Virus record (IMG/VR): IMGVR_UViG_3300044632_001003
Location: 124,001-188,000 of that record
DNA: 64,000 bases
Strand: one strand, 5' to 3'
A program made the translations under genes and the position numbers. The notes below the pieces were generated by a model. The model did no database searches, was not told the origin of the DNA, and worked only from the letters and a program-made list of their open reading frames with translations. This document shows positions 1,921-6,394 of the stretch, one piece after another; the stretch's first letter is position 1; every line of letters starts with the position of its first letter.

Positions 1921-2330
1921 TGCCGAGAAAAACTCTTAAAGACAAACAAGAGAAGCAACAAAAACTTCAACAAAATAAAGCAGTCAAAAATAGGGTTTTG
2001 CCACTTGTAGAAAGTATTAATGGCACTGAAGACCCTGATGATTTGATGCAGGAACTCATGGGACTTTTATCTGAGTCAAGCACTGCACCACAAGTAGGTA
2101 AATACTATACTTTTGTTTATTCGCCAAAAACATCTGGAATTACTTATGATGAATATCCTTTGGTTGCAGTAACTGAAGTTTTAAAATGGGGATTCAAAGG
2201 ATTTAATTTTCACTGGAATGATGGAAGGCAATATACCTGGAAAGAAATCATTGGTGGTGTGTATAATATTCTAGATGAAGAAATAACTGATGTACGAAAG
2301 ATACCTTTTGGAAAAATACGATCTAAATAG
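1920..2330 (+). CDS. gp2: DNA end protector protein gp2-like
   Basis: YTFVYSPKT...YDEYPLV...GFKGFNFHW; follows gp4. Confidence 0.7.
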   Translation: MPRKTLKDKQEKQQKLQQNKAVKNRVLPLVESINGTEDPDDLMQELMGLLSESSTAPQVGKYYTFVYSPKTSGITYDEYPLVAVTEVLKWGFKGFNFHWNDGRQYTWKEIIGGVYNILDEEITDVRKIPFGKIRSK

Positions 2331-2344
2331 TTAGAAAAAGATAA

Positions 2345-3367
2345 ATGGTAGTTAAGCCCTGGGAAGTCCAACGAAGCTCAACAACAAGTAACCCACCATC
2401 TTCTTCTGCTGGGTCATCTGCCCCAGCTAAGCCAGATAAACAGCAAGCTCAAAAATCCAATAAGAAGACAGCATATAGATATCCATTTGATAGAATTGAT
2501 GATGGTGATGACTACTTATTAATAGAAGTTATTGATTTTGTTCCTGGTGGATTACAAAGACAAGGTGCCGAGTCTTTAGCATTAGTTACAACAGATCAAA
2601 CTCTAGCAAAAAACAAGCAAAAAGTACTTAGTCGAATTATTTTACCTATTCCAGAAGGTGTTGGAGATACCAATAATGCAGACTGGTCAAATAGTAACGT
2701 AAATCCATTTGATGCTACTTTGATTGGAGCATTCAATCAATTTTTGGGACAATCTGCTGGGGGAAATCTTCCAGGTGCTTTTGGTGACATGGCTAAAAAT
2801 CTTGCTGGTTCTGGATCTGCTTTAGCACTATCTGCAGAAGGAGGAAAGGCATTTATGGCATCAATGTCTGCTAAAGCAGCCGCAGCGATAACAGGAAATG
2901 CTAACGCCCAGGGACTAATTAATAGAGCACTTGGTGCAACATTAAACCCAAATAGCCAACTCTTATTTAACAGTGTGGCTCAAAGATCTTTTGGATTTAG
3001 TTGGGACTTAGTTCCAAGGTCTAAAAAGGAATCGGATGAAGTAAAAAATATAATAAGAATATTTAAATCCTACATGTCTGCAAGAAAAGGTGCTCAGGCT
3101 CAACCAGGTGGTGGATTCTTTATTGGGTCTCCAAGTGTATTCCAATTAACTTACATGACAGGTCAAAAACCACATGCATTTTTGAACCAGTTCAAACCAA
3201 TGGCATTAACTGGGATGTCAGTTAATTATACAGGATCTGGAACTTATGCAACATATGGTGATTCAACACCAGTTCATATGCAATTAACACTTAATATGAG
3301 CGAACTTACACCAATTTATGCTGAAGATTATGATACAAAAGAAGGAAAAGATGGAGTAGGATACTAA
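2345..3367 (+). CDS. gp48: Baseplate tail tube cap gp48
   Basis: NPNSQLLF..V..RSFGFSWDLVPRSKKES...P.VFQLTY; synteny. Confidence 0.85.
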   Translation: MVVKPWEVQRSSTTSNPPSSSAGSSAPAKPDKQQAQKSNKKTAYRYPFDRIDDGDDYLLIEVIDFVPGGLQRQGAESLALVTTDQTLAKNKQKVLSRIILPIPEGVGDTNNADWSNSNVNPFDATLIGAFNQFLGQSAGGNLPGAFGDMAKNLAGSGSALALSAEGGKAFMASMSAKAAAAITGNANAQGLINRALGATLNPNSQLLFNSVAQRSFGFSWDLVPRSKKESDEVKNIIRIFKSYMSARKGAQAQPGGGFFIGSPSVFQLTYMTGQKPHAFLNQFKPMALTGMSVNYTGSGTYATYGDSTPVHMQLTLNMSELTPIYAEDYDTKEGKDGVGY

Positions 3368-3368
3368 G

Positions 3369-4025
3369 ATGGCATACTTTAGAGAACTACCAGATTTAGA
3401 ATATCAATCACCATTCTCGGATAGAAACTCTTCATTAGATTATGTAAGGGCAAAAAATATCTTTAGAAGAGTAAAAATCAGAGACGACTTACAGAAAGTT
3501 TTTACAATATTCAACAAATATACCATTTCTGATGGTGCAAGACCTGATACAGTTGCAGAGGCACTATATGGAAAGTCAGAATTTGACTGGGTTGTACTCA
3601 TCAGTGCTGGGATAGTTAATGTAAGAGATGAGTGGCCACTCTCAAACTATGATTTGTACAATTACAGTTATGAAAAATATGGAGATAATCTCAATGACAC
3701 TAAATTTTATGAAACAATAGAAGTCAGAGATCCTAATGGAAGATTAATTCTCCCTGCTGGAAAAGTTGTTGATGCTAACTTTACAATTCCAGACCCAGCG
3801 AATAAAGTTCAAAATTTACAACAATCTAAAGTTGTTGTAGCAATTAATAATTATGAATATGAAGTTCGTAAGAATGAGGCAAAAAGAAACATTTATGTAT
3901 TAAAATCAGAATACTTACCAAGTTTCTTAACTGATATTAGAAAGATTATGACATATACAGAATCATCTCAATTTATTGATTCTAAGTTAATTAAGGCATC
4001 TAATACTAGAATCAAGTCACCATAA
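3369..4025 (+). CDS. gp53: Baseplate wedge subunit gp53
   Basis: MAYFRELPDLEY...RPDTVAEALYGKSEFDWVVL. Confidence 0.9.
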   Translation: MAYFRELPDLEYQSPFSDRNSSLDYVRAKNIFRRVKIRDDLQKVFTIFNKYTISDGARPDTVAEALYGKSEFDWVVLISAGIVNVRDEWPLSNYDLYNYSYEKYGDNLNDTKFYETIEVRDPNGRLILPAGKVVDANFTIPDPANKVQNLQQSKVVVAINNYEYEVRKNEAKRNIYVLKSEYLPSFLTDIRKIMTYTESSQFIDSKLIKASNTRIKSP

Positions 4026-4051: not shown

Positions 4052-4975
4052 TCAGTCTTCGGCAAGACGGGCGAAGTAGGACAGAGCATCATCATCCTCA
4101 TCTTCTTCAACCGCAGCAGCACGACGGGTGGGTTGAAGATTGTTGAGTTCAGTACGAAGATCCTCAGTTAGTTCGCGGGTCGAACCACGGGTGTTGTCCT
4201 CATCAAGATCTTCGGGGTCCTGATAACGAGGAGTACCTTTGGAACCAAGCACATAGTCAAGACGCTTCTTCAGTTCATCATAGGTCTTGAATTGGTCGGC
4301 AGCAACGAGTTCGGCAAGCGAATACTGCTTCTTCCACACTGCTTCCATTGCATCATCATCGTCCAGCAGAGGAGCAGCAGCAGCAAACTCACTAGAATCA
4401 TAGTTACGATAACCAGCAACGTTCTTCGCCTTCAGTTTGAAGTTGGCACCTTGCCAGAAGTCAAACGGATCGATTGCTTCCTCATCTTCAAACTCGGGTT
4501 GCATCGCAGCAGTCAGTTTGTCGAAGATCTTTTTACCGAACTTGAACAGGAAGACCTTACCTTCGTTCGCAGGGTTGGCAGGATCTTTCACAACGTAAAT
4601 GTTGCTCACATAAGTCAGTTTGCGCTTCTGCTTACGTGCCAGTTCCTTACCAGCATCAGTACCATTGTTCCACAGTTCAGAGTTGTACTCAGACACTGGA
4701 TCCTTCTGACCCAGAGTAGTCAGAGAGTTCTCAATATACCAACCACCAGGACCTTGGAATGCGTGACTGTAGAGTTTCACGAACGGAAGGTCCTCACCGT
4801 TCGGAGCAGGGAGGAAACGGATTACGGCATAACCATTGCCGCTCTTATCTACATCCAGTTTCCAGATGCGGTCATCACTAGAACCGCTACCAGTATTCAT
4901 TTTTTCAACTTCTTTGACCAGTTTAGCGGTCAGAGAGCCCAATTTAGATTGCTTCTTAAGGTCAGCAAAAGACAT
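4052..4975 (-). CDS. gp32: Single-stranded DNA-binding protein gp32
   Basis: GNGYAVIRFLPAP...YSHAFQGPGGWYIENSLTTLG; acidic tail. Confidence 0.97.
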   Translation of the reverse strand: MSFADLKKQSKLGSLTAKLVKEVEKMNTGSGSSDDRIWKLDVDKSGNGYAVIRFLPAPNGEDLPFVKLYSHAFQGPGGWYIENSLTTLGQKDPVSEYNSELWNNGTDAGKELARKQKRKLTYVSNIYVVKDPANPANEGKVFLFKFGKKIFDKLTAAMQPEFEDEEAIDPFDFWQGANFKLKAKNVAGYRNYDSSEFAAAAPLLDDDDAMEAVWKKQYSLAELVAADQFKTYDELKKRLDYVLGSKGTPRYQDPEDLDEDNTRGSTRELTEDLRTELNNLQPTRRAAAVEEDEDDDALSYFARLAED

Positions 4976-5037
4976 TTGGATTACCTCGGATAGTTTGGAT
5001 TCGGGGGATTTACTTGGATATTATAGCGAAGATTGAA

Positions 5038-5370
5038 TCACCTGTCAATGAATTGTTTGAGGGATTCAATGGTCTTATTCATACTACTGAACAGTACTTG
5101 CATATCAGTCTCTGGTGGAAAACCCATCAATGCGACTGATTTGCGTAGGTTCTCTTTCATCTCAACCGCTTGTGGATCATCTGAAAGAGACAGTCTAGTA
5201 TACATCACTCTCTGCTTTTCTAGCAAGAGTTCTAACTTTTCAATGTGTTCCAGTTTGGTCTCACGGGGCATCATACCAAAAGTGAGAATACTTCCGTATA
5301 TCTCCTCTTGTAACTTATTGATTTCTTTCAGTTCATCTTGAATAATATCGGAGTCAAAAAAGTTACTCAT
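5038..5370 (-). CDS. Conserved cyanophage protein (DUF1825-like)
   Basis: FFDSDIIQDEL...LLEKQRVMYTRLSLSDDP; usual position between gp59 and gp32. Confidence 0.75.
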   Translation of the reverse strand: MSNFFDSDIIQDELKEINKLQEEIYGSILTFGMMPRETKLEHIEKLELLLEKQRVMYTRLSLSDDPQAVEMKENLRKSVALMGFPPETDMQVLFSSMNKTIESLKQFIDR

Positions 5371-5422
5371 CTATGATTTCCCTTAAAATCTTCTTGTACT
5401 GGAATACGTCAATATTTATGAA
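5363..5422 (-). pseudogene. Stranded original 3' end of gp59
   Basis: Translates FINIDVFQYKKILREIIDE*, versus FLQIDIFNYKKILREIIS* at the end of the current gp59 ORF; overlaps the ATG of the next gene. Confidence 0.85.
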
Positions 5423-5721
5423 TTATTCTTTAATGCTCTTTTTCTTTCTCTTGCCCGTTCCTTACGGTTTTCCCTATCTTTTTGATTTTCCCAATATCTC
5501 TTTTTCTCCCTAGCTCGTCTAGCTAAAACTTGCTCCTCAGTCAAACCTTTTGCCCATCTCTTCTTTTCATAATCTGGATTTTTATCTCTCCACTTTTTTC
5601 TAGATTGTTCTTTTTGAACCTCTCTAGATGGAAAATTTTCCCAATTTTCGTCCTTTATATCTTCTATAAAATCAGGACCATCAATATTAAGAGCAAGATT
5701 AATACTCGATACATTTAACAT
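5416..5721 (-). CDS. Small protein with a highly basic helical C-terminus, possibly a degenerate homing-element protein
   Basis: 101 aa, K/R/E-rich second half; CTAAATA late promoter at 5744-5750. Confidence 0.65.
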   Translation of the reverse strand: MLNVSSINLALNIDGPDFIEDIKDENWENFPSREVQKEQSRKKWRDKNPDYEKKRWAKGLTEEQVLARRAREKKRYWENQKDRENRKERARERKRALKNNS

Positions 5722-5730
5722 ATTCTTTTA

Positions 5731-5797
5731 GTAGGGGTAATATTATTTAGGCGGGACTTACGCAAGTCAAATACCCCTACCCGACTTTGCTGCCCGC
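5731..5797 (-). other. GC-rich structured leader
   Basis: GTAGGGGTA/TACCCCTAC (5731-39/5772-80), GACTT/AAGTC hairpin (5755-68), GCGGG/CCCGC (5751-55/5793-97). Confidence 0.6.
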
Positions 5798-5800
5798 ACT

Positions 5801-6394
5801 CTATGAAATTATTTCTCTAAGAATTTTTTTATAGTTAAAAATATCTATTTGAAGAAATGGTGAATATTTTTTAATTTTAAGAGAAACACACTCCCACACT
5901 GGGTCCAAAAGTTTTTCATCAAACGTCTTCCCGAACAGGAATATTTTATCATATATGACCAGTGTTTCAAGGCTAATCTTCCCGCTCAGGAATTTTTTTA
6001 GAACGGGTGGATGTCCTTTGGAACAATTCAACGCATCCTCTAATTTTGTTTCCGAGAACAATTCGTTGCTTTGCTCTTTGAACAAGTAAGTCAAACTCTG
6101 CTGTCGTCTCATCCATTCTTGATATGTTCTTTCTCCTTCGTTTATTAAAGAACCAATCCATAAATTACTCGGGTTGTCTGCTTCTACAAAGTTTGATACT
6201 AAGAAATCTACGACTTCTTTATCAGAATATTTGCGACTTGTCTTCTCGAACCAGTATTTGTCCTTGCGTTTGTTGAAGGATGTCATACTGGCACGGGTCT
6301 TCGCACCATATTTAAAGAAATCGTATTTTGGGTTTGTGAAATGATTTTTAAGTGACAAATAATGTTGATAAGTTTCAAAGGGTGTCACGATCAT
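5801..6394 (-). CDS. gp59: Helicase loader gp59
   Basis: PFETYQHYLSLKNHF...YDFFKYG...FNKRKDKYWFEK. Confidence 0.9.
   Translation of the reverse strand: MIVTPFETYQHYLSLKNHFTNPKYDFFKYGAKTRASMTSFNKRKDKYWFEKTSRKYSDKEVVDFLVSNFVEADNPSNLWIGSLINEGERTYQEWMRRQQSLTYLFKEQSNELFSETKLEDALNCSKGHPPVLKKFLSGKISLETLVIYDKIFLFGKTFDEKLLDPVWECVSLKIKKYSPFLQIDIFNYKKILREIIS

What the first reader, a model, noticed from the sequence alone, without database searches (positions are those of the whole stretch)
5363..5890. Insertion that rebuilt the 3' end of gp59 and stranded the original tail
Seen: gp59 switches to AT-rich codons near 5890 and ends FLQIDIFNYKKILREIIS*. About 380 nt downstream a second copy, FINIDVFQYKKILREIIDE*, still overlaps the start codon of the DUF1825 gene. 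Between them are a structured leader, a late promoter and a 101-aa basic ORF with no HNH, GIY-YIG or LAGLIDADG motif. Established: free-standing homing elements can bring a recoded copy of their target site so the host gene stays intact. Inference: this is a homing-type cassette targeting an essential replication gene, either a decayed endonuclease or an unrecognised nuclease/DNA-binding family.
Basis: partly seen in the sequence, partly recalled or inferred. Interest (0 to 1): 0.75.

Follow-up and report, generated by a model that had tools for sequence, protein, structure and literature searches.

The report
Nuclease-less homing cassette in cyanophage gp59
A roughly 500-base mobile cassette of homing-endonuclease origin has inserted into the end of the helicase-loader gene gp59 of a freshwater T4-like cyanophage. 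It carries its own recoded copy of the gene's end and strands the original. Its gene has lost the nuclease domain but is still kept by selection, and the cassette has still moved between phages.

Summary
gp59 (5801-6394, minus strand) ends FLQIDIFNYKKILREIIS*. A second copy, FINIDVFQYKKILREIIDE*, lies at 5363-5422 and overlaps the DUF1825 start codon.

- **Not an artefact.** Contigs from three independent metagenome runs span the region without a difference.
- **Empty alleles exist.** About 66 of 80 close relatives have one gp59 tail overlapping DUF1825.
- **The cassette has moved.** It is 94-99% identical to locus L129, whose flanking genes are only 73-78% identical. The closest empty relative, L030, has flanks 88-100% identical.
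- **The slot is a known one.** T4 SegG occupies the same 59|32 position.
- **The 101-aa ORF is not decaying.** dN/dS is 0.1-0.2. Its basic helical C-terminus is 94% identical to that of a 177-aa protein at the same site, whose N-terminal domain is probably GIY-YIG.
- **The nuclease is replaced.** A roughly 30-residue N-terminal motif takes its place. The motif heads a small family of nuclease-less proteins with NUMOD3-like tails.
- **The leader is shared.** The same module precedes GIY-like, HNH and nuclease-less genes at several loci. It resembles the late-promoter and hairpin control of T4 homing endonuclease genes.

Verdict: a new variant of a known kind. How the cassette moves without a nuclease is unresolved.

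The parts
5925..6394 (-). Resident body of gp59, the helicase loader (T4_Gp59_N and T4_Gp59_C domains). Closest to empty-allele relatives.
   Evidence: Pfam hits. It is 0.88 identical to the empty L030 but 0.78-0.81 to carriers L129 and L016. Mismatch map.
5801..5924 (-). Cassette-borne replacement of the gp59 3' end. A co-conversion tract runs from about 5924-5892. The last 19 codons plus stop (5857-5801) duplicate the stranded tail. It is AT-rich (GC 16-25%) and carries the ECVS marker.
   Evidence: It is 0.97 identical to L129, 0.99 to L142 and 0.93 to L016, but 0.71 to the empties. All carriers have DPVWECVS, the close empties ETVS. Codon comparison.
5722..5800 (-). Conserved leader associated with homing endonuclease genes. 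It has a hairpin (closing stem GCGGG/CCCGC, inner stem AAGUC/GACUU, 14-nt loop holding GUAGGGGUA), a -35-like TTGACT, a truncated late box CCTAAATA, then UACCCCUAC, which is complementary to the loop, 10 nt before the AUG.
   Evidence: The core occurs in 43 IMG/VR loci in front of at least 8 different ORF types. Alignments A2 and A4. Covariation table. TTGACT-17-AATAAT scores 10 of 12. No Rfam match. It occurs once in the phage's own genome.
5416..5721 (-). 101-aa ORF. An N-terminal motif (residues 1 to about 30, MLNVSSINLALNIDGPDFIEDI) is followed by a basic helical C-terminal domain (residues about 35-101) shared with a GIY-like endonuclease at the same site. The stop codon comes from resident gp59 sequence.
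   Evidence: Homologs at 75-99% identity all lie at the gp59|DUF1825 site. P0009 shares 94% identity over the C-terminal 68% of the ORF. dN/dS 0.10-0.21. AlphaFold2 pLDDT 82, helices 33-47, 51-57 and 62-100, no PDB match. N-motif family.
5363..5418 (-). Stranded original gp59 tail (...NIDVFQYKKILREIIDE*). It is now untranslated, holds the Shine-Dalgarno-like AAGGGA 8 nt before the DUF1825 ATG, and serves as the right-hand homology arm.
   Evidence: It is 0.94-0.96 identical to the live tails of empties L093 and L104. Remnants of all carriers resemble live alleles. Every cassette type keeps at least the last 8-12 codons.
5038..5370 (-). DUF1825 gene, the downstream flank. In empty alleles its start codon overlaps the gp59 stop.
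   Evidence: Pfam PF08855. Overlap seen in S-SKS1 and about 66 loci.

Best explanation
Window 5419 to about 5924 is a free-standing cassette of the homing-endonuclease type. It sits in the 3' end of gp59, in the same 59|32 slot that SegG occupies in T4.

Why the tail is duplicated (inferred). In these phages gp59 and DUF1825 overlap (GATGAGTAA), so there is no intergenic space to insert into. The element therefore carries its own copy of the last 30-35 codons of gp59, which keeps gp59 intact. That copy is synonymously diverged, and the insertion splits the presumed target CCATTTC|TAAATATTGA, which would make carriers immune. The displaced resident tail stays behind because it holds the ribosome-binding region of DUF1825, and because it acts as the right homology arm.

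What the original enzyme was. The payload was a small two-domain enzyme: a Seg-like, probably GIY-YIG, nuclease domain plus a basic helical DNA-binding tail. This form is still present at the same site in other phages (177 aa, P0009).

What the window carries. In the window's allele the nuclease domain has been replaced by a roughly 30-residue N-terminal motif. This gives a 101-aa protein that very probably binds DNA and has no recognisable catalytic motif, and it is maintained by purifying selection.

How it is expressed (inferred). Expression is set by a conserved leader built like the control regions of T4 homing endonuclease genes. A hairpin or terminator ends gp59 transcripts. Promoter elements lie between two complementary 9-mers. 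Only transcripts that start inside the leader would lack the upstream 9-mer and so leave the start region open. The window's allele has a 14-nt deletion that removes the U-run, the -10 box and the first two bases of the late box.

Shown: the anatomy, the empty alleles, the exact right junction, the mosaic identity pattern that shows transfer between divergent backgrounds, selection on the ORF, the shared C-terminal domain, and recurrence of the leader with HNH and GIY-like genes.

Inferred: that the original insertion followed cleavage of gp59 by the GIY-like enzyme. Also inferred is that the nuclease-less version now spreads by recombination, helped by breaks made in trans by nuclease-bearing relatives during co-infection or by breaks its own tight DNA binding provokes. 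The leader's translational logic is inferred too.
For: - **Empty alleles.** S-SKS1 and about 66 of 80 loci whose DUF1825 is at least 91% identical have a single tail overlapping DUF1825. A metatranscriptome contig shows the empty junction at 5418|5892.
- **Mobility.** Window versus L129: new tail 0.97, leader 0.99, ORF 0.94-0.98, but gp33 0.73, gp59 body 0.78, DUF1825 0.77. Window versus empty L030: gp33 1.00, gp59 body 0.88, DUF1825 0.91. The breakpoint lies at about 5892-5924.
- **Remnants track live alleles.** Remnants in different carriers match live gp59 alleles, where decay since a single insertion would be expected to leave frameshifts and stops.
- **Nuclease-bearing version at the same site.** P0009 (177 aa), found in L012-L015, has a C-terminus 94% identical to the ORF.
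- **Evidence that the P0009 N-domain is GIY-YIG.**
  - It has more than 874 relatives, many fused to NUMOD3.
  - Its invariant Y, Y, G, R, E and N residues stand in GIY-YIG order.
  - Language-model neighbours are SegE and GIY-YIG clusters at 0.93-0.95.
  - The predicted topology is beta-beta-alpha-beta-alpha.
  - The top Foldseek and VIA-align matches are all GIY-YIG: UvrC, I-TevI 1mk0, UPF0213 and Slx1.
- **Selection.** dN/dS 0.10-0.21 at dS up to 0.83.
- **Leader.**
  - It occurs in 43 loci before HNH+NUMOD4, NUMOD3, GIY-like and N-motif ORFs.
  - Both stems covary.
  - An unrelated leader in L012 has the same architecture, with a 9-bp long-range pairing enclosing a hairpin and TATAAATA.
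- **T4 precedent.** For the regulation, PMC2988022. For the slot, SegG between genes 59 and 32.
Against: - No nuclease activity, cleavage site or homing event was observed.
- GIY-YIG membership of the related enzyme is not statistically established. There is no Pfam hit, hhalign against T4 Seg domains gives E = 0.13, Foldseek E is at least 0.08 and Z at most 3.9 on a model of pLDDT 58.
- The window's own genome has no homolog of that nuclease domain and no NUMOD3, so no partner nuclease is at hand.
- These phages are mosaic everywhere, so ordinary homologous recombination could account for the transfer.
- The loop-to-start-region pairing is invariant and so has no covariation support.
- The leader's energy is unremarkable, and the window allele lacks an intact TATAAATA.
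- There is no transcript evidence. RNA run X19 has zero depth over 5440-5871.
Confidence: 0.8

Rival explanations
1. Domesticated regulator, no longer a selfish element. The 101-aa protein is a DNA-binding protein derived from a homing endonuclease that the phage now uses, for example as an operator-binding repressor or activator of the DUF1825-gp32 unit or of its own leader, as I-TevI autorepresses. The cassette's patchy distribution would reflect ordinary recombination plus selection.
For: - Purifying selection is strong on both parts of the ORF.
- There is no nuclease motif.
- The insertion sits just upstream of DUF1825 and gp32.
- I-TevI is known to double as an autorepressor (PMC2988022).
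- Mosaicism is general in this region.
Against: - Most close relatives (about 66 of 80) do without it.
- The cassette is 94-99% identical across backgrounds that differ by 22-27%. That suits a spreading element better than a host function.
- N-motif proteins occur at unrelated loci with different DNA-binding tails.
Confidence: 0.3
2. The 101-aa protein is itself an active endonuclease of an unrecognised family, with the conserved N-terminal motif (…LNIDGPDFIEDI…) as a minimal catalytic or metal-binding module.
For: - The N-motif is conserved (dN/dS 0.2-0.3).
- It always stands at residue 1 in place of a nuclease domain, in 19 protein clusters.
- It is acidic, and the cassette has moved recently.
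Against: - The motif is only about 25-30 residues, a short helix with two very short beta segments of two residues each.
- It has no conserved His, Cys or Lys, and its few invariant positions are N and G.
- It matches no fold or family.
- No known nuclease is this small.
Confidence: 0.08
3. A single ancient insertion inherited vertically. On this reading the 'empty' alleles are secondary precise deletions, and nothing is mobile now.
For: - All homologs of the ORF lie at one site.
- Alleles of the ORF have diverged to dS of about 0.8, so the cassette type is old.
Against: - A precise deletion would have to restore an intact gp59 C-terminus overlapping DUF1825 in dozens of lineages.
- The retained tails of empties are the GC-richer 'old' type, not the cassette's AT-rich copy.
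- Cassette and flank identities are strongly incongruent.
- The right junctions differ between cassette types, which points to independent insertions.
Confidence: 0.05
4. An assembly or chimera artefact that duplicates the gp59 end.
For: None found. The window comes from a metagenome-derived viral contig.
Against: - The exact stretch is in at least 18 DNA runs from 2016 to 2024.
- Three independent runs give contigs across it with 0 differences.
- Nine IMG/VR contigs carry the identical cassette.
Confidence: 0.01

Closest known systems
T4 SegG (gene 32.1) and the other free-standing Seg/Mob homing endonuclease genes of T-even phages ('intronless homing')
   Same: - It occupies the same syntenic slot, between gene 59 and gene 32.
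- It is a free-standing gene, and flanking gene sequence is co-converted.
- It is present or absent among close relatives.
- Its control region has promoter elements and an RNA pairing next to the start codon (PMC2988022).
- A related allele has a Seg-like two-domain architecture.
   Different: - It is inserted inside the 3' end of gp59, with a duplicated and recoded gene end, not between genes.
- The window's allele has no nuclease domain.
- The related nuclease domain is not recognised by the Pfam GIY-YIG or SegE models.
- The DNA-binding tail is a basic helical domain without a Pfam match.
Trans-homing of the defunct I-TevIII by MobE (PMC2790892)
   Same: An element whose own endonuclease is non-functional is still mobilised, because a nearby or related enzyme makes the break in the recipient.
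   Different: - The nuclease-less ORF here is under purifying selection; it is not a decaying remnant.
- No helper nuclease is encoded nearby or anywhere recognisable in the same genome.
- A helper would have to come from a co-infecting phage. This was not tested.
Homing-endonuclease ORFs of fungal mitochondria that insert into gene ends and bring a replacement end, leaving the original as a downstream pseudo-fragment
   Same: The mobile ORF carries a foreign copy of the host gene's terminus, so the gene stays intact, and the native terminus is stranded next to it. The Allomyces atp6 GIY-YIG element is recalled from memory, not checked here. A related case of mitochondrial gene-end duplication through intron mobility is mentioned in PMC8393795.
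   Different: - This is a phage, not an organelle.
- The ORF is not fused in frame to the host gene.
- The stranded tail has a continuing role as the translation-initiation region of an overlapping downstream gene.
F-CphI and its neighbour S-PM2p181 in cyanophage S-PM2 (PMC6083498)
   Same: - They are free-standing homing elements of T4-like cyanophages.
- S-PM2p181 is a homolog (59% identity) of the GIY-like nuclease domain found at the gp59 site.
   Different: - F-CphI itself uses an Endo VII motif and targets psbA.
- No cassette at gp59, no N-motif protein and no shared leader turned up in the papers found and read here. That was a small sample of the literature.

Membership tests
Free-standing homing endonuclease gene cassette (intronless homing element) | Present or absent at one precise site among otherwise collinear close relatives | tested here: met
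   About 66 empty, 9 identical, 1 diverged and 2 alternative cassettes among 80 loci whose DUF1825 is at least 91% identical. S-SKS1 is empty.
Free-standing homing endonuclease gene cassette (intronless homing element) | The element and adjacent flank (co-conversion tract) are more similar between genomes than the surrounding genes are | tested here: met
   Window versus L129: cassette 0.94-0.99, flanks 0.73-0.78. Breakpoint at about 5892-5924.
Free-standing homing endonuclease gene cassette (intronless homing element) | The carrier's copy of the target site is disrupted or altered (immunity) | tested here: inconclusive
   The empty-site sequence CCATTTC|TAAATATTGA is split by the insert, and the new copy differs at about half of the next 15 bases. 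The true recognition and cleavage site is unknown.
Free-standing homing endonuclease gene cassette (intronless homing element) | Encodes a site-specific endonuclease that cleaves the empty allele | tested here: not met
   The window's 101-aa ORF has no nuclease domain by Pfam, PHROGs, NCBIfam, ESM Atlas or fold search. Only sister alleles (P0009, L123) carry one. Enzymatic activity cannot be tested with these tools.
Free-standing homing endonuclease gene cassette (intronless homing element) | Super-Mendelian inheritance in mixed infection | not testable with these tools
   Needs phage crosses.
GIY-YIG nuclease superfamily (for the 177-aa sister protein P0009, not the window's ORF) | Significant sequence match to a GIY-YIG profile | tested here: not met
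   There is no Pfam hit at E up to 10 for 32 members. The SegE_GIY-YIG model finds nothing in three records that carry leader-associated GIY-like ORFs; the record holding P0009 itself was not held and was not searched. hhalign against T4 Seg N-domains gives E = 0.13. A profile search of PDB sequences finds nothing.
GIY-YIG nuclease superfamily (for the 177-aa sister protein P0009, not the window's ORF) | Conserved Y…Y-x-G…R…E…N residues in order, and a beta-beta-alpha-beta-alpha core | tested here: met
   Invariant Y8, Y10, Y20, G22, R24, E67 and N79/N84. Predicted elements E6-13, E19-26, H31-36, E51-54 and H60-73.
GIY-YIG nuclease superfamily (for the 177-aa sister protein P0009, not the window's ORF) | Structural match to solved GIY-YIG domains | tested here: inconclusive
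   The top 6 Foldseek PDB hits, the top 7 VIA-align hits (UvrC, I-TevI 1mk0, UPF0213) and 28 of the top 30 Swiss-Prot models are GIY-YIG. However, E is at least 0.08, TM about 0.3 and Z at most 3.9, on a model of pLDDT 58. The ESM feature search points the same way at 0.93-0.95.
T4-type hairpin and late-promoter control of homing endonuclease genes | A promoter lies between two complementary segments, the downstream one next to the start codon | tested here: met
   In the consensus leader the order is GUAGGGGUA, TTGACT-17-TA(C/T)AAT overlapping TATAAATA, UACCCCUAC, then 10 nt and AUG. An unrelated leader in L012 has the same layout. In the window itself the late box is only CCTAAATA.
T4-type hairpin and late-promoter control of homing endonuclease genes | The pairing forms and represses translation of read-through transcripts, and transcripts start inside the leader | not testable with these tools
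   Both 9-mers are invariant, so there is no covariation. No RNA coverage is available.

The most novel reading that the evidence does not exclude
The N-motif proteins would be a previously unrecognised class of nuclease-free homing elements. Each has a homing-endonuclease-type DNA-binding module headed by a roughly 30-residue motif. The motif would either recruit a nuclease supplied in trans, by the phage, the host or a co-infecting element, or provoke breaks at the bound target. That would allow super-Mendelian spread without an encoded catalytic domain. They would share one portable expression leader with GIY-YIG and HNH cassettes across freshwater and marine T4-like cyanophages.
Probability: 0.2. 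Interest if true: 0.85.

Novelty: new variant of a known kind. Interest (0 to 1): 0.62.

Why it matters
Free-standing homing endonuclease genes are a major force in phage mosaicism, but nearly all mechanistic knowledge comes from T4. This locus adds three things.

- **A way into overlapping genes.** It is a clear natural example of an element invading a pair of overlapping essential genes by carrying a recoded copy of the gene end and leaving the old end as the neighbour's ribosome-binding region.
- **A testable puzzle about element decay.** The cassette has lost its nuclease, yet it is conserved (dN/dS about 0.15) and has recently moved between backgrounds that differ by about 25%. This bears on how homing elements persist after losing their nuclease, whether by trans-mobilisation, domestication or another mechanism.
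- **A handle for finding more elements.** The roughly 80-nt leader is shared by GIY-like, HNH and nuclease-less cassettes. It can be used to find mobile elements in cyanophage metagenomes and to study how their expression is timed.

The probable GIY-YIG domain, which has more than 874 relatives and is missed by Pfam, is also worth a family model.

Tried and rejected
- **Family and fold searches on the 101-aa ORF.** Pfam, PHROGs and NCBIfam gave nothing. tblastn against GenBank phages gave nothing meaningful. The ESM Atlas gave only unnamed viral clusters below 0.9. Foldseek against PDB gave no match.
- **Leader as a known RNA.** Rfam gave only chance-level hits. Single-sequence folding gave z = -0.69, so thermodynamics alone does not support 'structured'.
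- **Other copies in the same genome.** There is no second copy of the leader or the ORF, and no copy of the GIY-like domain or NUMOD3. Only sub-threshold HNH_3 and GIY-YIG matches exist elsewhere.
- **Sequence proof that the P0009 N-domain is GIY-YIG.** All of these failed: Pfam on 32 members, a profile against PDB sequences, SegE_GIY-YIG on three records that carry leader-associated GIY-like ORFs, the record holding P0009 not being held, and hhalign against SegG alone and against seven T4 Seg domains.
- **A mistaken lead.** I first thought the S-PM2 homolog was F-CphI. It is the neighbouring gene S-PM2p181.
- **S-SRM01.** Its NUMOD3 gene lies between gp32 and DUF1825, not at the gp59 junction.
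- **The count of structure pairs was not used.** MAFFT misplaces the 3' strand of the closing stem around the 14-nt indel and gaps L150, so I made a structure-anchored pair table instead.
- **Ideas considered and dropped.** I considered a PD-(D/E)xK reading of 'GPDFIEDIK', but the K is not conserved and the spacing is wrong. I also considered a capsid-targeting or protease-site reading of the N-motif, but there is no consistent L/I-x-E.
Full report
**1. What is there**

The window comes from a 205-kb viral contig, estimated 96% complete. It is a T4-like cyanophage recovered from lake and freshwater metagenomes.

On the minus strand the order is PhoH, exonuclease, gp33, gp59 (5801-6394), a 101-aa ORF (5416-5721), DUF1825 (5038-5370) and gp32 (4052-4975).

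- gp59 ends ...KKYSPFLQIDIFNYKKILREIIS* at 5857-5801.
- In another frame, at 5422-5363, the sequence reads FINIDVFQYKKILREIIDE*, and its GATGAGTAA overlaps the DUF1825 ATG.
- The two copies share 13 of 18 residues but only 33 of 57 bases.
- Of the 13 conserved-residue codons, 11 differ at the third position. GC is 16% in the new copy and 30% in the old one.

The two tails are old, diverged alleles, not a fresh duplication.

**2. It is not an artefact, and empty alleles exist**

- The exact 701-base stretch occurs in at least 18 DNA metagenome runs from 2016, 2020 and 2024.
- Contigs from three of those runs cover 4900-6295 or 4900-6350 without a single difference.
- In Synechococcus phage S-SKS1, gp59 ends ...FLNIDVFKFKKILRDLVDE* and overlaps DUF1825 directly, with one tail and no ORF.
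- I surveyed 80 IMG/VR loci whose DUF1825 is 91-100% identical to the window's:
  - about 66 have that empty arrangement;
  - 9 carry the identical cassette;
  - one carries an 82% version;
  - two carry a different 151-aa ORF behind the same leader.
- Some empties have a DUF1825 that is 99% identical.
- A metatranscriptome contig from a relative also shows the empty junction, joining 5418 to 5892.

**3. Boundaries**

- **Right junction.** Homology to empty alleles begins exactly at 5418. The ORF's TAA stop (5418-5416) is therefore the out-of-frame TAA inside the resident gp59 codons CTA-AAT.
- **Left junction.** This is a recombination breakpoint, not a fixed end.
  - Against the empty L030, the window has few mismatches down to about 5926 and many from 5891.
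  - Against the carrier L016, it has many down to 5924 and few from 5902 (sliding identities).
- All close carriers read DPVWECVS where the empties read DPVWETVS.
- The cassette-borne gp59 segment is thus about 100-125 bases. Its last 57 bases duplicate the stranded tail.

**4. The cassette has moved**

| Comparison | New tail | Leader | ORF | gp33 | gp59 body | DUF1825 |
|---|---|---|---|---|---|---|
| Window vs L129 (another carrier) | 0.97 | 0.99 | 0.94-0.98 | 0.73 | 0.78 | 0.77 |
| Window vs L030 (empty) | 0.71 | absent | absent | 1.00 | 0.88 | 0.91 |

The stranded tails of different carriers are in frame. They differ from one another the way live gp59 alleles differ: the window's remnant is 0.94-0.96 identical to the live tails of empties L093 and L104. 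If the remnants had been non-coding since the cassette alleles diverged (dS up to 0.8), they should be riddled with replacements. A few lineages do show this (L105, L129, L148). The pattern fits repeated entry into intact alleles, with the recipient's own tail retained.

The right junction differs between cassette types:

- types A (the window's kind) and D keep about 14-18 codons;
- type B keeps 13 codons;
- type C keeps about 12 codons.

This points to several independent insertions in the same 20-base region of gp59. That region is highly conserved at the DNA level in the empties (CCATTTCTAAATATTGA).

**5. Why a tail is left behind**

In the empties the two genes overlap, and the Shine-Dalgarno-like AAGGGA for DUF1825, 8 nt before its ATG, lies inside gp59 codons L-R-E.

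Any insertion must both complete gp59 and preserve this region. Every cassette type keeps at least the last 8-12 codons. This reading follows directly from the sequence, but it remains an inference.

**6. The ORF**

- It has no hit in Pfam, PHROGs or NCBIfam.
- Its homologs (75-99% identity) all lie between gp59 and DUF1825.
- Eight distinct alleles give dN/dS of 0.10-0.21 at dS up to 0.83. Selection acts on both the N-terminal 34 codons (0.2-0.3) and the rest (0.06-0.19). This is a working gene, not a decaying one.
- AlphaFold2 with a 17-sequence alignment gives pLDDT 82. The model has a small N-terminal element, helices at 33-47 and 51-57, and one long basic helix at 62-100. It has no PDB match.

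The key relative is P0009 (177 aa), at the same site in L012-L015. Its last 70 residues are 94% identical to the window's ORF. Its first 100 residues form a separate domain:

- it has more than 874 relatives, many fused to NUMOD3;
- one relative is S-PM2p181, next to F-CphI;
- another is the 'NUMOD3 protein' of S-SRM01.

**7. Is that domain GIY-YIG?**

Sequence tests fail:

- no Pfam hit;
- no match to PDB sequences;
- hhalign against seven T4 Seg domains gives E = 0.13, although the motifs line up.

Everything else points one way:

- invariant Y8, Y10, Y20, G22, R24, E67 and N79/N84;
- language-model neighbours that are SegE and GIY-YIG clusters;
- a beta-beta-alpha-beta-alpha prediction;
- lists of best structural matches made up almost wholly of UvrC, I-TevI, UPF0213 and Slx1 GIY-YIG domains, though at weak scores on a model of pLDDT 58;
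- relatives that match PHROG 314, 'homing endonuclease'.

I put this at about 0.85 probable.

**8. The N-motif**

In the window's ORF the nuclease domain is replaced by MLNVSSINLALNIDGPDFIEDI....

The same motif heads the 151-aa and 134-135-aa ORFs that occupy the gp59 site in other phages. It also heads proteins at other loci (L127, L150) that carry NUMOD3.

A profile of the motif, searched against 1.84 billion representative proteins, finds 19 clusters. In the 16 that are small proteins of at most 195 aa, the match starts at residue 1 to 4. The other three are multi-stretch internal matches in long proteins of 622-2925 aa. The 13 small proteins I read have NUMOD3-like or other homing-endonuclease-type DNA-binding tails and no nuclease domain.

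Its function is unknown. It is too short, and too poor in catalytic-type residues, to be a convincing nuclease.

**9. The leader**

The 24-nt core of the leader occurs in 43 IMG/VR loci, and a second scan added diverged variants. It precedes:

- the three N-motif ORF types;
- three GIY-like types;
- HNH+NUMOD4 genes;
- a basic-repeat protein.

Some of these lie at gp59 and some at other sites.

The consensus layout is as follows:

- a closing stem (GCGGG/CCCGC), an inner stem (AAGUC/GACUU) and a 14-nt loop;
- a U-run;
- TTGACT-17-TA(C/T)AAT overlapping TATAAATA;
- UACCCCUAC, then 10 nt, then AUG.

Support for the structure is mixed:

- Both stems are supported by compensatory and wobble changes. 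In the closing stem, position 4 is seen as C-G, G-C, U-A or U·G. L150 changes the inner stem to CAAUC/GAUUG.
- The loop's GUAGGGGUA is perfectly complementary to UACCCCUAC, but both are invariant. That pairing therefore rests on complementarity alone.
- The unrelated leader of L012 supplies a parallel: another 9-bp long-range pair encloses a hairpin and TATAAATA.

This is the logic described for I-TevI, I-TevII, I-TevIII, segB and mobE in T-even phages (PMC2988022).

The window's allele, like L129, L142 and L178, has a 14-nt deletion. It removes the U-run, the -10 box and the first two bases of the late box, leaving CCTAAATA and a weaker TTGACT-17-AATAAT. Its regulation may therefore differ.

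No Rfam family matches.

**10. Comparison and verdict**

T4 carries SegG, a GIY-YIG homing endonuclease, exactly between genes 59 and 32. The slot, the free-standing architecture, the co-conversion and the control logic are thus all familiar.

Three things are unusual:

- the insertion into the coding end of an overlapping gene pair, with a recoded duplicate;
- a nuclease-less derivative that is under selection and has recently transferred, headed by a recurrent N-terminal motif;
- a single leader shared across nuclease classes.

L142 carries the window's tail and leader (0.99-1.00 identical) but a type-B ORF. This shows modular exchange inside the cassette.

How a nuclease-less cassette moves is open. 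The window's genome has no copy of the GIY-like domain and no NUMOD3. The options are breaks made by nuclease-bearing relatives during co-infection, as MobE does for I-TevIII (PMC2790892), ordinary recombination in a highly mosaic phage group, or something the N-motif does.

I rate the finding a new variant of a known kind, of moderate to high interest.

Noticed in passing
window 5020-5048 (minus strand): A perfect sigma-70 consensus, TTGACA-17-TATAAT (12 of 12), lies at the end of DUF1825 and in the spacer just upstream of gp32. It is a likely early promoter for gp32.
   Followed up: no
L179 (T4 NC_000866) 2910-3542; L012 4987-5637; L002 (S-SRM01) 1644-2294: The 33-59-32 neighbourhood is a hot spot for homing endonuclease genes across T4-like phages. 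T4 has SegG between 59 and 32. L012 and S-SRM01 have a 216-aa NUMOD3 protein next to gp32, and in L012 this is in addition to the gp59-site cassette.
   Followed up: partly
L112 6935-7936, L147 569-1725, L131 1954-2853, L137 6850-7338: Two different endonuclease classes sit directly upstream of the same conserved gene (MFD[WY][VIL]RSSY...) in different phages: GIY-like+NUMOD3 in L112 and L147, and HNH+NUMOD4 in L131 and L137. All are behind the same leader. L131 also has a second GIY-like ORF 1.4 kb upstream.
   Followed up: partly
L124 3521-3707; L153, L156, L164, L172 (leader without a start codon); L148 remnant: Decay stages at the gp59 site. L124 has a GIY-like ORF cut to 28 aa, followed by out-of-frame basic-repeat coding sequence. 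Four loci have leaders with no ATG after them. L148 has a badly eroded stranded tail.
   Followed up: partly
L024 (S-PM2 NC_006820) 2495-3124: S-PM2p181 is the 'hypothetical protein' immediately downstream of the characterised homing endonuclease F-CphI, between psbA and psbD. It is a homolog (59% identity) of the GIY-like nuclease domain, so that locus may hold two tandem homing genes.
   Followed up: no
L003 (Marine virus AG-345-L05) 1969-3399: A marine relative has a 68-aa acidic ORF between gp59 and DUF1825, and a 211-aa ORF between gp33 and gp59, with no duplicated gp59 tail. L007 has an extra 69-aa ORF between gp33 and gp59.
   Followed up: no
own genome G000:C1 199384-199452, 23990-24112 and 67903-68151 (outside the window): There is a sub-threshold HNH_3 match (23.8 bits) and two sub-threshold GIY-YIG matches (14.1 and 13.1 bits), one of them containing a stop codon. 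These are possible further endonuclease genes or remnants in the same phage. None has the leader.
   Followed up: no
window 5757-5780 (minus strand): The minimum-energy fold extends the inner hairpin to GUCGGGUA-GGGG-UAUUUGAC. This would hide the 9-mer that is complementary to the start region. The leader may therefore switch between two conformations. The whole segment is invariant in 26 variants, so covariation cannot decide.
   Followed up: partly
L169 10192-10890 and L176 3557-4255: The same leader also precedes a 232-aa protein made almost entirely of basic K/E/Y/N repeats (KEYxKKYYQEKKE...). It has no N-motif and no nuclease domain.
   Followed up: no
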